A stretch of 63,837 nt of DNA, filler included, from Octopus bimaculoides (lineage: Eukaryota), in NCBI RefSeq assembly GCF_001194135.2. It is 5 parts of 5 records of this genome, joined end to end, with 100 filler letters (N's around TTAATTAATTAA, not from the genome) between each part and the next. Parts side by side here need not be neighbours in the genome. Positions count along the whole stretch, not along the records: positions 56,283 to 62,180 come from NW_026326131.1; 4 more parts are not named here. One strand, given 5' to 3'. Below, piece by piece: positions 56,283-62,180 of the stretch. The notes beneath the pieces were generated by a model that was given only the letters and a program-made list of their open reading frames with translations, made no database searches and had not been told where the DNA came from. The first letter of the stretch is position 1. Each line of letters opens with the position of its first letter. The position numbers and the translations under genes are program-made.

Positions 56283-56720
56283 CATCATTTTTATCATCAT
56301 AATCATTATCATCATCATGATCGGCATTTTCATCATCATCATCATCATTATCATCATTTGGATCTTTATCATCGTCATCATGAGCATCACTCATGTTCAT
56401 CAACTTTATCAATGTTATTATCATTGTCATCACGAATGTAGGCTTTATCGTCATCATCATCAACATTATAATGAACACCATGATCTTCAACATCAGCCTC
56501 ATTATTTCCAGCATTACCATCATCATCCCAATCATCGTCCTCATCAACTGCATCATCATCATCATCTTCAGCATCTTCATCTTGAAGATAATGATGATTA
56601 TGATTATTATGTGGATGATCGTTATCATTAGCACTATCATCACCATTACCTGCATCATTTTCATCTAAGGACTCAGCGACCTCATATATTATTTCTAAAC
56701 ATGTCCCTTTTATAATGCAG

Positions 56721-56792
56721 ATATCTTAACTGGAATCAAATTAAAGACATCAAAGATGGATGGTTTGCAAATCTCTCCAATTTAAAAACATT
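56721..56792 (+). CDS. Leucine-rich-repeat exon A (72 nt, phase 2-2): (L)YLNWNQIKDIKDGWFANLSNLKT(L)
   Basis: ccttttataatgcag| acceptor, |gtaagt donor, open frame, typical 24-aa LRR. Confidence 0.9.
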
Positions 56793-58164
56793 GTAAGTTG
56801 CCTCTGTTTCATTCAGACTCTTTCACTCACGATATAATTCTCAATGTTTAATATTAAATCATTTGCCGATTTGTCTCATTCACNNNNNNNNNNNNNNNNN
56901 NNNNNNNNNNNNNNNNNNNNNNNNNNNNNNNNNNNNNNNNNNNNNNNNNNNNNNNNNNNNNNNNNNNNNNNNNNNNNNNNNNNNNNNNNNNNNNNNNNNN
57001 NNNNNNNNNNNNNNNNNNNNNNNNNNNNNNNNNNNNNNNNNNNNNNNNNNNNNNNNNNNNNNNNNNNNNNNNNNNNNNNNNNNNNNNNNNNNNNNNNNNN
57101 NNNNNNNNNNNNNNNNNNNNNNNNNNNNNNNNNNNNNNNNNNNNNNNNNNNNNNNNNNTGTCTTCTTCCTTTTATTCCCCCTGTTGTTCTTGTTCTTCCT
57201 CTTCTTCTTTTTCTCCCACCTATTCATCGCGTTTTCCTTCTTTTTCTTATTCTTTTATTGCTTCTGTTAATTTATAAGTATCATAATTATTATGATCATC
57301 ATCATCGTCATCATTATCTTCATCATCATGTTTGTTATTTATCATCATCAGCATCATTCTCATAAACATCATATTCATTATTGTCATCATAATTTTCATC
57401 GCCTGCGTCATCATTATCAACATTATTGTCTTTATCATCTTCTGTATCATCCTGATAATTTGAATTATCATAACCATTATTATCATCATCAACAGCATCT
57501 TTATCATCATCAGCGTCATAATCATCATCATCGGCATCATCACCTTTTTCTTCTTCCGTTGTTTCCTCTTATTCATCACGTTCTTCTACTTTTTCTACTT
57601 CATCTTATTTTATCTCTTCTATTAATTCATAATTATTATCATTATAATGATCATTATCATCTTCATCCTAATCACCTGATGATGATGCTAATGATCATGA
57701 TTATTATCTTTATCATCATCGTCATCATTATCAGCATCATCCTCATTAGAATCACCGTTTCCACCATTTTAATCATAAGCCACAGCCTCATTATAATGAA
57801 CATGATCATCATCATTTTCAACATCCTCATCATCATAATCATTGTCCTCATCAACTACATCTGCATCAACACCATCATTATCATCATCCTCATCATCATC
57901 ATCATCACTTTTATCATTGTCCCCATCATCACGATCATCATGATCATCATCGACGCCCTTGCCATCATCAAGATCACCGTTATAATCATCATCCTCACCA
58001 TCATAGTGATCAGAATCCCCATTATCATCACCATCTTCATATTCCTTTCTTCCTTATCCTCCTAATTATTCTCCATATTCCTCTCACTCTAATCACTCAA
58101 TATTGAACATTGTATCACGAAACTATTCTATATTATTTATAATCTTCTCCCCTTTATATTGCAG

Positions 58165-58236
58165 ATCTCTTCACCACAATCAAATTAAACACATCAAAGA
58201 TGTATGGTTTACAAATCTCTACAATTTAAAAGAATT
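58165..58236 (+). CDS. LRR exon B: (L)SLHHNQIKHIKDVWFTNLYNLKE(L)
   Basis: ttgcag| and |gtaagt; 72 nt; in frame. Confidence 0.9.
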
Positions 58237-59492
58237 GTAAGTTGCCTCTTCTGTTTTCTTCAGACTCTTTCACTCACGATATAATTCTCAGTGTTTGATA
58301 TTAAATCATTTGCCGATTTTTCTCATTCACATTAGTAAGATATATGTAAACTGCTTTCTTCTTCTTGCTTTCATTTTTCTTCTTATTATTATACTTATTC
58401 TTCTTCCTCTTTTTCTTCCTCCCTTCCCCTTCTGCTCCCTCTCCTCCTCCTCATTCTTCCCCTCCTCTCCTCCTCCTATTCATATTAATTCTTGTTCTAC
58501 AAATCTTTTTTTCTTCTTTTTCTTCTTCATCATCTTCCATCTCTCCTTCTCCTCCTCCTTTCTTCTCCTTCCTTCTTTTCTTCATCATCTTTACCTTGTT
58601 TTTCTTTTCCCTTCGCATCTCTTCCTTCTCGTTCTTCTTTCCTTTTTCTTGCTCACCGTCTTTTCGATTCTTCGTCATTTGATATTTATCAACATATTAT
58701 GATCATTAGCTTCATCTTCATTAACATCATCGCCATATTGTAATTCGCAGTGATAAAATTTTATCATCATCATCTTTGTCATTATCATGACCATTTCCTC
58801 ATCAATATAATCATTATCATTTTCATCATCATGATTTTCAACGAGATCAGCATTATAATCCTCATCATCGCCATCATCTTCATTATCATCAACATCATAA
58901 TAATCATTTCTTAAACATCAGCCTCAATATCATCTGCATTACCATCGTCATCACCATCATTATCAACATCACCATCATTATCATCATCACCATCATCATC
59001 ATCATCAGCGGCATCATCATCTTCAAAATCTTCGTCATGATGATAATGGTGATTATGATAATTATTATTATGATCATCATGAACATTATCATTATCCTTA
59101 CCTTTGCCAGCATCATTTTCCTCTGATGCACCAGCCAGGTAATAGTGAACATGATGGTAATATTCATCAACAACCTTATCATCATAATCATCGTTATCAT
59201 CAACTACATCTTCATCAACACGAGCATTATCATCCTCATCACCTTCACAATCGTCACCATCATCATGATCATTATCGTTAGACTTACTATCATCATGATC
59301 CCTATCATAATGATCATCATCACCATCATCGTCATAAGCATGCTCATAATCAACTTCATATTCCTTTCTTCCTTCTCCTCCTCCTAATTATTCTCCATAT
59401 TCCTCTCACTGTTATCACTCAGTATTGAATATTGTATCACGAAACTATTATTATATTATCTCATTTGAAAACTCCTCCCTTTCATAATGCAG

Positions 59493-59564
59493 AATTTTAT
59501 CATCGAACAGAATTACGGACATCGAAGATGGATCGTTTGCGAATCTCTACAATTTACGAAGATT
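59493..59564 (+). CDS. LRR exon C: (L)ILSSNRITDIEDGSFANLYNLRR(L)
   Basis: atgcag| and |gtaagt; 72 nt; in frame. Confidence 0.9.
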
Positions 59565-61146
59565 GTAAGTTGCCTCTGTTTTCTTCACACTCTTTCACTC
59601 ACGATATAATTCTCAATGTTTAATATTAAATCATTTGCCGATTTTTCTCATTCACATTCGTAAGACATATGTAATCTGCTTTCTTCTTGCTTTCATTCCT
59701 CTTCTTCTTCTTCTTCTTGCTCTACTACTCTTCTTTTTCTTCTCTTCCTCGTCCTTGTNNNNNNNNNNNNNNNNNNNNNNNNNNNNNNNNNNNNNNNNNN
59801 NNNNNNNNNNNNNNNNNNNNNNNNNNNNNNNNNNNNNNNNNNNNNNNNNNNNNNNNNNNNNNNNNNNNNNNNNNNNNNNNNNNNNNNNNNNNNNNNNNNN
59901 NNNNNNNNNNNNNNNNNNNNNNNNNNNNNNNNNNNNNNNNNNNNNNNNNNNNNNNNNNNNNNNNNNNNNNNNNNNNNNNNNNNNNNNNNNNNNNNNNNNN
60001 NNNNNNNNNNNNNNNNNNNNNNNNNNNNNNNNNNNNNNNNNNNNNNNNNNNNNNNNNNNNNNNNNNNNNNNNNNNNNNNNNNNNNNNNNNNNNNNNNNNN
60101 NNNNNNNNNNNNNNNNNNNNNNNNNNNNNNNNNNNNNNNNNNNNNNNNNNNNNNNNNNNNNNNNNNNNNNNNNNNNNNNNNNNNNNNNNNNNNNNNNNNN
60201 NNNNNNNNNNNNNNNNNNNNNNNNNNNNNNNNNNNNNNNNNNNNNNNNNNNNNNNNNNNNNNNNNNNNNNNNNNNNNNNNNNNNNNNNNNNNNNNNNNNN
60301 NNNNNNNNNNNNNNNNNNNNNNNNNNNNNNNNNNNNNNNNAACATCATTCTCATCATCATCATCGTCATCATCTTCATCATCACGATGTTCATCATCGTC
60401 CCCATCATTTTGTTATCTACAGCATAATTATCGTCATCATCATTATCATCGATACAAACTTCATCATAAATGTAACCCTATAACGTCATGATCAACATCA
60501 TCATTATGATCTTCATCACCATCCTAATCGTCATTATCATCAATTTCATTATCATCATCATCCTTATCATCATCATCATCAGCATCATCACAATCATTAC
60601 CATCATCATCATCACAATCATTACTATCATCATCATTTTCATCATCATATCATAATTACCATCCTCATCATAATTACCATCCTCATCATAATTACCATCC
60701 TCATCATCGTGAAGAGCTTCAACATTTTCAGCGTTTTCATGATGATGTTAAAGATTTTGATTATTATCTTTATCATCGCCATCATTATCATCTTCATCAC
60801 CATTTCCACCATCACTTTCCTCATAAGGAACAGCCTCATCATAACGAATATCATCATCATAATCATTTTCATCATCAACTCCATCTTCATCAACACCATC
60901 ATCATCACGTTCATCATTGACGTCATCATCATGCTCAGCATGATCATCATCGTCGTCCTTGCCATTATCAAGATCACCGTCATTATCATCATCTTCATCA
61001 GACTCCCCATCATCTTCACCATCTTCATATTCTTTTCTTCCTCATCCTCCTAATTATTCTCCACATTCCTCTAATCACTCAATATTGAACGTTGTATCAC
61101 GAATCTATTCTATATTATTTCTAATCTTCTCCCTTTTATAATGCAG

Positions 61147-61218
61147 AGAACTTTTCCGGAATCAAATCAAAGAAATCAGAGCTGGATCGTTTGCAAATCT
61201 CTACAATTTACGAAGATT
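61147..61218 (+). CDS. LRR exon D: (L)ELFRNQIKEIRAGSFANLYNLRR(L)
   Basis: atgcag| and |gtaagt; 72 nt; in frame. Confidence 0.9.
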
Positions 61219-61394
61219 GTAAGTTGCCTCTTCTGTTTTCTTCAGACTCTTTCACTCACGATATAATTCTCAATGTTAAACATTAAATCATTTACCGATT
61301 TTCCTCATTCACATTCGTAAGACTTATGTAACTTGCTTTCTTCTTTCTGCTTTCATTCTTCTTCTTGCTCAACTCCACTTTTTCTTCTTCCTTT

Positions 61395-61510
61395 TCTTTT
61401 TCTTCCATCGTACATCCTTCTTCTTTTTCTTCCATCGTACATCCTTCTTCTTTTTCTTCCATCGTACATCCTTCTTCTTTTTCTTCCATCGTGCATCCTT
61501 CTTCTTTTTC
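61395..61510. repeat. 27-bp minisatellite, about 4 copies, within an LRR intron
   Basis: tttttcttccatcgtacatccttcttc unit (MEEKEEGCT pseudo-ORF on the minus strand). Confidence 0.9.
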
Positions 61511-62101
61511 TTCTTTTTGTTCTGCTTCATCTTTATCCTCTTCTTTTTCTTCCTTCGCTCTTTCTTCTACTTCATTTTCTTATTTTTCTCTCACATATTC
61601 ATCGCGTTCATCACCTTCTTCTACATCTCCTACTTCTTAATGGTTATGATTATTGTCTTTATTATCATCGTCATCATTATTATCATCATCATAATCATCA
61701 TTAGCATCAACATTTCCACGCGCACTTCATTATAATCATCAGCCTCATCGTAATGAACAAGATCTTCATAATTATAAACATCCTCATCATCATAATCATT
61801 TTCATCATCAACTACACCCTCATCAACACCAGCGATATCATCATCATCACGTTCCTTATTGTCCCCATCATCATGATCGTCATCATCATAACCCTTTGCC
61901 ATCATCAAGGTCACCGTTATAATCAATATCGTCTCCATCAACTTCATCAGAATCCCCATCAGCAATACCATCTTCACATTCCTTTCTTCCTCCTCATCCT
62001 AATTAATCTCTACATTCCTCTCACTCTTATCACTCAATATTGAATATTGTATCACGAAACTATTCTATATTATTTCTAAACTTCTCCCTTTTATAATGCA
62101 G

Positions 62102-62173
62102 AAGTGTTTACGAAAATCTAATTACGGACATCAAAGATGGATCGTTTGCAAATCTCTACAATTTGACATATTT
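62102..62173 (+). CDS. LRR exon E: (L)SVYENLITDIKDGSFANLYNLTY(L)
   Basis: atgcag| and |gtaagt; 72 nt; in frame; the scaffold ends 7 nt later. Confidence 0.9.
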
Positions 62174-62180
62174 GTAAGTT

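What the first reader, a model, noticed from the sequence alone, without database searches (positions are those of the whole stretch)
56721..62173. Variation between LRR cassettes is concentrated on the predicted ligand-binding concave face
Seen: in LxxLxLxxNxI the x positions differ at every junction (KT-S-HH-Q, KE-I-SS-R, RR-E-FR-Q, RR-S-YE-L; exon A begins Y-NW-Q), while the FxNLxNL framework is almost invariant. Exons C and D differ at nearly all of the first 12 codons, mostly non-synonymously, but by a single synonymous base (GCG/GCA) over the last 35 nt. Known: these beta-strand x residues form the binding surface in VLR, TLR and plant LRR receptors. Inference: diversifying selection and/or patchy gene conversion on a recognition surface.
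Basis: partly seen in the sequence, partly recalled or inferred. Interest (0 to 1): 0.72.

Follow-up and report, generated by a model that had tools for sequence, protein, structure and literature searches.

The report
Tandem one-repeat LRR exons, variable face
Five tandemly duplicated 72-base exons, each coding one leucine-rich repeat of an animal-type receptor-like protein, have changed far faster at the few codons lining the predicted binding face than at silent sites or in the neighbouring introns; this design is already known from other organisms, so it is a good but not new example.

Summary
The piece holds five 72-nt exons (A 56721-56792, B 58165-58236, C 59493-59564, D 61147-61218, E 62102-62173), each between ..TGCAG| and |GTAAGT and each in intron phase 2. 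Each encodes one 24-residue LRR (Pfam LRR_8, E=2e-53). They sit in homologous exon+intron units of about 1-1.6 kb. Both N gaps lie inside introns.

Exon bases 1-24 differ by 46% between copies. The intron flanks differ by about 6% downstream and 6-15% upstream (Fisher p=1e-5 to 2e-8). The six concave-face codons (x2, x3, x5, x7, x8, x10) differ by 59% per base, other x codons by 18%, framework codons by 11%. A codon model of my own gives omega of about 12-18 for the concave codons and about 0.7-0.8 for the rest (LRT 20-26). This holds with a rate multiplier for the 5' half and with the introns as clock.

Three caveats apply:
- There are only five exons and the organism is unknown.
- At protein level the pattern is generic: 13.5% of comparable five-repeat windows in related LRR proteins show as large a contrast.
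- The evidence for gene conversion is weak (C/D, p=0.009 uncorrected).

Close precedents are the Ectocarpus ROCO 72-nt LRR exons and the Tetrahymena 90-bp LRR exon arrays. Verdict: a real feature and a new member of a known kind.

The parts
56283..56720 (+). 3' part of the intron before exon A. It is (ATC)n-rich, and only its last ~40 nt are homologous to the 3' flanks of the other introns.
56721..56792 (+). LRR exon A, 72 nt, phase 2/2: (L)YLNWNQIKDIKDGWFANLSNLKT(L)
   Evidence: Pfam LRR_8
56793..58164 (+). Intron A->B. It has a conserved 5' flank at 56793-56883, the N gap at 56884-57158, then a (TTC)n block, an (ATC)n block and a conserved 3' flank at about 58020-58164.
58165..58236 (+). LRR exon B: SLHHNQIKHIKDVWFTNLYNLKE
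58237..59492 (+). Intron B->C, with no gap. It serves as the reference for the unit layout: 5' flank, (TTC)n block, (ATC)n block, 3' flank.
59493..59564 (+). LRR exon C: ILSSNRITDIEDGSFANLYNLRR
59565..61146 (+). Intron C->D. The N gap at 59759-60340 lies between the (TTC)n and (ATC)n blocks.
61147..61218 (+). LRR exon D: ELFRNQIKEIRAGSFANLYNLRR. Its 3' half is identical to that of exon C except for GCA/GCG.
61219..62101 (+). Intron D->E, the shortest at 883 nt. It contains a 27-nt tandem repeat at 61389-61513.
62102..62173 (+). LRR exon E: SVYENLITDIKDGSFANLYNLTY. It is followed by GTAAGTT at the edge of the piece.

Best explanation
The piece is an internal stretch of a eukaryotic gene, most like animal extracellular LRR proteins. 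In it a unit of one exon plus one intron (about 1-1.6 kb) has been duplicated in tandem at least five times.

Each exon is a self-contained cassette of 72 nt with a phase-2 intron on both sides. Copies can therefore be added or lost without breaking the frame, and each adds one 24-residue turn to an LRR solenoid.

After duplication three things stayed similar: the codons that build the solenoid core (L, N, I, F), the rest of the repeat, and the roughly 100-145 nt of intron next to the exons. The six solvent-exposed codons on and next to the concave beta-strand were replaced many times faster than silent sites.

The most likely cause is selection for a different residue set in each repeat of the binding face, acting on newly duplicated repeats. 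Occasional exchange between copies (exons C and D) may add to it.

Shown: exon structure, unit homology, the divergence profile, omega well above 1 in this sample, and the LRR fold. Inferred: that the five exons are spliced into one mRNA, that the concave face binds a ligand, and that the protein is a receptor.
For: - Structure: five 72-nt exons with canonical splice sites, all open in one frame.
- Domain: LRR_8 at E=2e-53.
- Fold: the AF2 model built with an alignment has pLDDT 96.6 and strands at x3-L4-x5. Its TM-score is 0.90-0.95 to LRRTM2, VLR/repebody and LGR4, 0.92 to Nogo receptor chains (0.82-0.92 across entries) and 0.78 to Slit2 D4.
- Unit homology: the units align over their whole length, including 300-480 nt of intron interior.
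- Divergence profile: exon nt 1-24 0.46; exon nt 25-72 0.19; upstream flank 0.09-0.16; downstream flank 0-0.11. Variable columns are 16/24 in the exon start against 19/98 upstream and 10/91 downstream (p=1.6e-5 and 1.1e-7).
- Per codon class: concave 0.59, other x 0.18, framework 0.11 differences per base. Same-residue codons differ at 14.6% of degenerate third positions.
- Codon ML: omega_concave 11.8-18.0 and omega_other 0.70-0.84. The LRT against omega_concave=1 gives 20.5-26.5 on four topologies. It gives 21.4 with a free rate for the 5' half, 24.4 with intron flanks fitted jointly, and 92 if the flanks are taken as the neutral clock.
Against: - The sample is five sequences and 23 codons. 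The model is my own implementation with one tree, although the segments give different trees, so recombination is not modelled.
- Pairwise NG86 dS is very noisy (0.01-0.66) and exceeds dN for all four pairs that include exon C and for A/E and D/E.
- M0 over the whole exon is not significantly above 1 (p about 0.3).
- The same amino-acid contrast is common in related LRR proteins.
- No transcript, no full gene and no organism are known. No close homologue was found: the best identity is 41-47%.
- The assembly is gapped in exactly this repeat array.
Confidence: 0.55

Rival explanations
1. Ordinary LRR variability. The x positions are simply unconstrained (omega about 1) and the exons are old. 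The framework, the silent sites and the intron flanks look young because concerted evolution (unequal crossing-over or conversion) or constraint on splicing signals keeps them alike.
For: Concave positions are the more variable ones in most related LRR proteins. The intron flanks evolve at 0.41 of the exon's estimated neutral rate, a possible sign of constraint or homogenisation, though not significant (p=0.09). The segments give different trees: B, D and E are close upstream, C=D in the exon 3' half, and A and B are closest in the 5' half.
Against: The model with omega_concave=1 needs a tree length of about 6 per codon and fits worse by 10-13 lnL units. Silent third positions differ in only 14.6% of same-residue pairs. 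Conserved and hypervariable codons alternate one by one (x5 L6 x7 x8 N9 x10 I11), and conversion tracts cannot produce that. If homogenisation spares only these codons, that is itself selection for diversity.
Confidence: 0.3
2. Patchy gene conversion or unequal recombination between units builds mosaic exons, which adds to selection rather than replacing it. For example, C and D share a 3' half but have unrelated 5' halves.
For: C/D differ at 19/36 against 1/36 positions (Fisher 2e-6). Their longest shared run over polymorphic sites gives p=0.009. They are the most different pair in the 5' half and the most similar in the 3' half.
Against: After correction for ten pairs p is about 0.09, and no other pair is significant. 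Variable sites are concentrated in the 5' half anyway, which inflates the Fisher test. The downstream introns of C and D are no closer than those of other pairs (6/109).
Confidence: 0.3
3. The exons are alternative cassettes. The conserved intron flanks would be splicing-control elements, and different subsets of LRR exons would be included in different mRNAs.
For: All exons are symmetrical (72 nt, phase 2/2), so any subset keeps the frame. About 100-145 nt of intron on each side is much better conserved than the intron interior. Alternative splicing of tandem LRR exons is reported in brown-algal ROCO genes (PMC11378527).
Against: The complementarity between flanks is not above shuffled controls (z -0.7 to -1.5). 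Flank conservation is not significantly below the silent rate (p=0.09). The interior is microsatellite-like, so its higher divergence is expected. There are no transcript data.
Confidence: 0.1
4. Assembly artefact, or a dead array. Collapsed or chimeric repeat units in a gapped short-read assembly, or unexpressed pseudo-exons.
For: Two N gaps lie inside this array. No matching protein or contig was found in any collection searched.
Against: All five exons keep the frame, both splice sites and every core LRR residue, apart from one conservative Leu-to-Val at L6 of exon E, despite 15-35% nucleotide divergence. Variation follows codon and structural periodicity, which mis-assembly would not create.
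Confidence: 0.07

Closest known systems
Ectocarpus/brown-algal LRR-ROCO genes with 'type I' LRR exons (Zambounis et al. 2012, PMC3341825; PMC11378527)
   Same: There is one LRR per exon, each exactly 72 nt, with same-phase introns and tandem repetitive exon-intron units. Positive selection is detected at concave-face positions, and alternative splicing is reported.
   Different: The exon register differs: theirs is GxxPxxLxxxxxLxxLxLxxNxLx, while here the exon starts at x5 of LxxLxLxxN. Here the LRR is of the animal 'typical' type with Phe. No ROC-COR domain is visible in the piece, and the 33% G+C does not look like a brown alga (the last point is from my own knowledge).
Tetrahymena 90-bp LRR exon arrays (Xiong et al. 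2019, PMC6564038)
   Same: These are tandem arrays of equal-length LRR exons separated by phase-2 introns. A junction codon is shared between neighbouring exons, and the arrays grew by successive unit duplication.
   Different: Their exons are 90 bp with a 30-residue repeat in a ciliate. Here the exons are 72 bp, the repeat has 24 residues, and the introns are about 0.9-1.6 kb.
Animal LRR genes with one 72-75-nt phase-2 exon per repeat (LGR4/5, gonadotropin receptors). The gene structure is cited in PMC11378527 (Koo 1991) and otherwise from my own knowledge; Slit is from my own knowledge only.
   Same: The repeat class is the same and the architecture is one exon per repeat. LGR5 and LGR4 are among the best PDB sequence matches (E=4e-40) and LGR4 is a structural match.
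   Different: Those repeats are old and their introns are unrelated to each other. Here whole intron+exon units are still alignable. Orthology is not shown, since the best identity to any protein is 47%.
Fungal NLR WD/ANK/TPR repeats with high internal conservation (PMC4986451; Paoletti 2007)
   Same: Near-identical tandem repeats in which a few codons on the binding surface are hypervariable and positively selected, combined with exchange between repeats.
   Different: Those repeats lie within one exon and have a different fold. Their internal identity is about 85% or more, against 53-79% amino-acid identity between the repeats here.
Lamprey/hagfish VLR germline LRR cassettes
   Same: 24-residue LRR modules with hypervariable concave residues. 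VLR/repebody structures match the model at TM 0.90-0.95.
   Different: VLR cassettes are not exons and are copied somatically into an incomplete gene. Here every module has canonical splice sites, so ordinary splicing suffices.

Membership tests
Typical-class 24-residue LRR (Pfam LRR_8) | LxxLxLxxNxL...F consensus with 24-residue period, and a significant profile match | tested here: met
   LRR_8 at E=2e-53 with 4 stretches. L, N, I and F are invariant in all five repeats, except Val for Leu at L6 of exon E.
Typical-class 24-residue LRR (Pfam LRR_8) | Curved solenoid with a parallel beta-sheet on the concave side | tested here: met
   AF2 with a 33-row alignment gives pLDDT 96.6 and strands at 23-25, 47-49, 71-73 and 95-97. 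TM-score is 0.9-0.95 to solved LRR proteins. The single-sequence model failed.
One-LRR-per-exon symmetrical cassette arrays | Equal exon length that is a multiple of 3, the same intron phase on both sides, and canonical splice sites | tested here: met
   All 5 exons are 72 nt, phase 2/2, with AG|...|GTAAGT.
One-LRR-per-exon symmetrical cassette arrays | Units (exon+intron) related by duplication | tested here: met
   The units are colinear: 85-91% identity across the stretch that runs from within the exon through the 5' intron flank, and 75-84% over 283-485 nt of the 3' part of the intron.
Ectocarpus ROCO type I LRR exons | Exon register GxxPxxLxxxxxLxxLxLxxNxLx, with a ROC-COR GTPase downstream | tested here: not met
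   The register here is xLxxNxIxxIxxGxFxNLxNLxx(L) (against PMC3341825). The presence of ROC-COR cannot be tested because the gene runs off the piece.
LGR / glycoprotein-hormone-receptor family | LRR ectodomain joined to a rhodopsin-type 7TM domain, with orthology to LGRs | not testable with these tools
   Only five LRR exons are in the piece. LGR4/5 are good but not the best PDB matches. The nearest proteins are Branchiostoma LRR-TM proteins and an Octopus protein at 41-47%.
VLR-type somatic cassette system | Cassettes without splice signals that flank an incomplete germline gene | tested here: not met
   Every cassette has a polypyrimidine tract with AG and a GTAAGT donor.
Dscam-like regulated exon clusters | Conserved complementary intronic docking/selector sequences, and mutually exclusive inclusion | tested here: inconclusive
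   A 14-bp AU-rich complementarity between flanks recurs in each unit, but its energy is within 1.5 SD of shuffles. Inclusion patterns need RNA data.
Repeats under concerted evolution plus diversifying selection (fungal NLR paradigm) | Positive selection confined to surface codons of otherwise conserved repeats | tested here: met
   omega_concave is 12-18 against 0.7-0.8 for the rest, with LRT 20-26. The sample is small and the model is my own.
Repeats under concerted evolution plus diversifying selection (fungal NLR paradigm) | Exchange between repeats, and repeat-number polymorphism | tested here: inconclusive
   Only C/D is suggestive (p=0.009 uncorrected). Polymorphism cannot be tested.

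The most novel reading that the evidence does not exclude
An animal-type LRR gene uses a tandem array of symmetrical one-repeat exons as a combinatorial cassette library. Each exon carries a different concave-face residue set and each is flanked by about 100-145 nt of conserved intron. Regulated inclusion of different exon subsets would then give many receptor variants from one gene. That would be a splicing-based counterpart of VLR assembly or of Dscam.
Probability: 0.08. Interest if true: 0.8.

Novelty: new member of a known kind. Interest (0 to 1): 0.35.

Why it matters
If the signal holds in the full gene and its paralogues, this locus would be a clean case of a binding surface diversified repeat by repeat soon after exon duplication. 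It would be in an animal-type LRR protein and could be read directly against its own introns as an internal clock. Such arrays are candidate fast-evolving recognition receptors of invertebrate immunity. The same design has arisen in brown algae and ciliates, so the result would add to a pattern of convergent evolution rather than open a new one.

Tried and rejected
- Word-indexed protein search with the spliced 120 aa: nothing at E<=1e-5.
- Exhaustive representative search: 67,742 LRR hits, but the best identity is 41-47%, with no orthologue and no domain other than LRR or Ig in the closest hits. Their names are uncharacterised Branchiostoma proteins and one Octopus protein. This does not identify the source organism.
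- Exact-pattern scans of metagenome contigs with the conserved intron motif and with the exon motif: 0 hits each.
- Look-ups of two window ORFs for the source contig: not on record.
- Single-sequence AF2: all-helical, pLDDT 52, discarded.
- Intron-flank RNA pairing, both across the exon and within the intron: not better than shuffles.
- Rfam: only sub-threshold miRNA- and snoRNA-like hits in ATC/GAT hairpins.
- Long ORFs in the introns, on both strands: low-complexity Ile/His/Ser or Met/Asp runs whose frame drifts, so not coding.
- Inverted-repeat search: dominated by microsatellite self-complementarity.
- Pairwise NG86 dN/dS: too noisy with 23 codons to decide anything.
Full report
**What is there.** The piece (56283-62180, 33% G+C) is eukaryotic in style.

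It holds five exons of exactly 72 nt:
- A: 56721-56792
- B: 58165-58236
- C: 59493-59564
- D: 61147-61218
- E: 62102-62173

Each follows a pyrimidine tract plus TGCAG and precedes GTAAGT. The first base of each exon completes a TT|A leucine codon begun in the previous exon. All introns are therefore phase 2, and every exon is a symmetrical cassette.

Spliced together, the exons give 120 residues of perfect 24-residue leucine-rich repeats, xLxxNxIxxIxxGxFxNLxNLxxL (Pfam LRR_8, E=2e-53).

**The gaps.** Both N runs lie in introns.
- 56884-57158 begins inside the conserved 5' intron flank of exon A and ends in the (TTC)n-rich block.
- 59759-60340 lies between the (TTC)n-rich and (ATC)n-rich blocks of intron C->D.

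The sequence on both sides follows the order and orientation seen in the ungapped introns B->C and D->E. No exon is cut. The frame across a gap is fixed by the splice phase, not by continuity of the letters. A gap could hide one or more whole units, and this cannot be tested here.

**The units.** Exon plus following intron form homologous units of 955-1654 nt. Each intron has four parts in the same order:
- a conserved 5' flank of about 110 nt;
- a (TTC)n-rich block;
- an (ATC)n-rich block;
- a conserved 3' flank of about 145 nt.

The intron interiors are truly homologous, not merely both low-complexity, because blocks such as CAGCCTCAT..TAATGAACA and CCTCATCATCATAATCATT..CATCAACTACATC recur colinearly. 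The array therefore arose by tandem duplication of exon+intron units.

C and D differ in 11 of their first 12 codons (8 replacements, 3 silent). In their last 36 nt they differ by one silent base.

Mean pairwise nucleotide difference by codon class:

| Codon class | Difference per base |
|---|---|
| Six concave-face codons (x2, x3, x5, x7, x8, x10) | 0.59 |
| Ten other x codons | 0.18 |
| Seven framework codons | 0.11 |

The Mann-Whitney test of concave against other x codons gives p=0.001. The canonical six-codon set has the highest possible count of distinct residues.

**Exon against intron.** Divergence along the unit:

| Region | Divergence |
|---|---|
| 145 nt upstream (copies B-E) | 0.09-0.16 |
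| Exon nt 1-24 | 0.46 |
| Exon nt 25-72 | 0.19 |
| ~100 nt downstream | 0-0.11 |

Variable columns are 16/24 in the exon start, against 19/98 upstream (p=1.6e-5) and 10/91 downstream (p=1.1e-7). The change is abrupt at the splice sites. The refutation condition is not met.

**Codon models.** Pairwise NG86 values are too noisy to use (dN 0.22-0.46, dS 0.01-0.66).

I wrote a small GY94-type likelihood model (F1x4 frequencies, five taxa, 23 codons). Its codon partition was fixed in advance from LRR structure.
- One omega for all codons gives 1.5-1.8, not different from 1.
- Two omegas fit far better (2dlnL 48-60). They give omega_concave 11.8-18.0 and omega_other 0.70-0.84.
- Fixing omega_concave at 1 is rejected with 2dlnL 20.5-26.5 on the four best topologies.
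- Allowing the 5' half of the exon its own rate (estimate 2.1x) still gives 21.4.
- Fitting the intron flanks jointly gives 24.4. The flanks then evolve at 0.41 of the exon's neutral rate, not significantly below 1 (p=0.09).
- Taking the flanks as the neutral clock gives omega_concave of 32.

The 'old exons, neutral x positions' model needs a tree about four times longer. That contradicts the silent sites, since only 14.6% of same-residue codon pairs differ at degenerate third positions.

These numbers come from five short sequences, one tree, no recombination model and my own code. They are indicative, not final.

**Control for ordinariness.** I took the 150 best proteins from the exhaustive search and extracted 1047 windows of five consecutive 24-residue LRRs.
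- In the controls the concave positions differ in 76% of repeat pairs and the other x positions in 49%.
- Here the values are 88% and 42%.
- 13.5% of control windows show at least this contrast.

What is particular to this locus is that the repeats are young enough for introns and silent sites to serve as a yardstick.

**Structure.**
- A single-sequence AlphaFold model failed.
- With a 33-row alignment the model is confident (pLDDT 96.6). Its strands fall at residues 23-25, 47-49, 71-73 and 95-97, that is x3-L4-x5 of each repeat.
- The model superposes on LRRTM2, VLR/repebody and LGR4 at TM 0.90-0.95, on Nogo receptor mostly at 0.9, and on Slit2 D4 at 0.78.
- By sequence the nearest solved proteins are LRRC15, IGFALS, LGR5/4, TLR13/3 and LRRTM.
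- That x3, x5, x7 and x8 face the ligand is established for these families. It is inferred, not shown, here.

**Gene conversion.** C and D are the most different pair in the 5' half (19/36) and the most similar in the 3' half (1/36). A permutation over polymorphic sites gives p=0.009, about 0.09 after correction, and no other pair stands out.

Different segments favour different nearest neighbours. Exchange between units is plausible but not demonstrated. It cannot by itself produce codon-by-codon alternation of conserved and hypervariable positions.

**Identity of the gene.** No close relative exists in the collections.

The most similar proteins (41-47%) are uncharacterised Branchiostoma LRR-transmembrane proteins and one Octopus protein. 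This places the repeat type among animal extracellular LRR proteins but names neither organism nor family. DNA scans and ORF look-ups did not find the source.

**Comparison with what is known.** Several precedents share parts of this design:
- Tandem arrays of equal-length, same-phase, one-repeat LRR exons with positive selection on the concave face are described for brown-algal ROCO genes. Those exons are 72 nt but in a different register (PMC3341825, PMC11378527).
- Phase-2 LRR exon arrays grown by unit duplication are described for Tetrahymena, with 90-bp exons (PMC6564038).
- Animal LGR and gonadotropin-receptor genes have old exons of one LRR each. This is cited in PMC11378527 and otherwise rests on my own knowledge.
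- Conserved repeats with hypervariable surface codons are the fungal NLR paradigm (PMC4986451).
- VLR cassettes differ in lacking splice sites.

This locus is therefore a new member of a known kind.

**Verdict.** Conversion is only suggestive, and the protein-level pattern is generic. Interest is moderate to low at 0.35. The most novel reading left open is combinatorial splicing of the cassettes, at about 8% probability.

Noticed in passing
window 61389-61513: A 27-nt tandem repeat (TCCTTCTTCTTTTTCTTCCATCGTACA, 4.7 copies, 97% matches) is present only in intron D->E. It looks like a recent local expansion within the (TTC)n-rich block.
   Followed up: no
window 56283-56720, 57280-58020, 58760-59340, 60341-61000, 61660-61960: The (ATC)n-rich half of every intron reads as Asp-rich (GAT) on the minus strand and gives ORFs of 60-145 codons. 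The repeat phase drifts within each ORF between Met/Ile-rich and Asp-rich, so they look like degenerate microsatellite and not an antisense gene.
   Followed up: partly
window 56640-56720 versus 58040-58164, 59370-59492, 61030-61146, 61985-62101: The intron before exon A lacks the ~95-nt conserved block (CCTTTCTTCC...CACGAAACTATT) found before exons B-E. Only the last ~40 nt are homologous. This may be a deletion or the edge of the younger part of the array.
   Followed up: partly
window 58105-58125 with 58277-58296, and the same positions in the other units: The upstream flank carries CAATATTGAACATTG and the downstream flank carries CAATGTTTAATATT. They can pair over about 14 AU-rich bp in every unit, and the two A-to-G changes in the downstream motif after exon B appeared, on reading by eye, to keep G-U pairs. 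Duplex energies are within 0.7-1.5 SD of shuffled controls, so this may be chance.
   Followed up: yes
window 56793-56883, 58237-58350, 59565-59680, 61219-61335: The 5' intron flanks are only 4-8% divergent over about 110 nt, less than the exon's silent-site estimate (rate ratio 0.41, p=0.09). This is possible constraint on splicing signals or homogenisation, but it is not established.
   Followed up: partly
window 62102-62173: Exon E departs from the framework at L6 (Val, GTT) and has Leu at x10. It is the only copy with a change at a core position.
   Followed up: no
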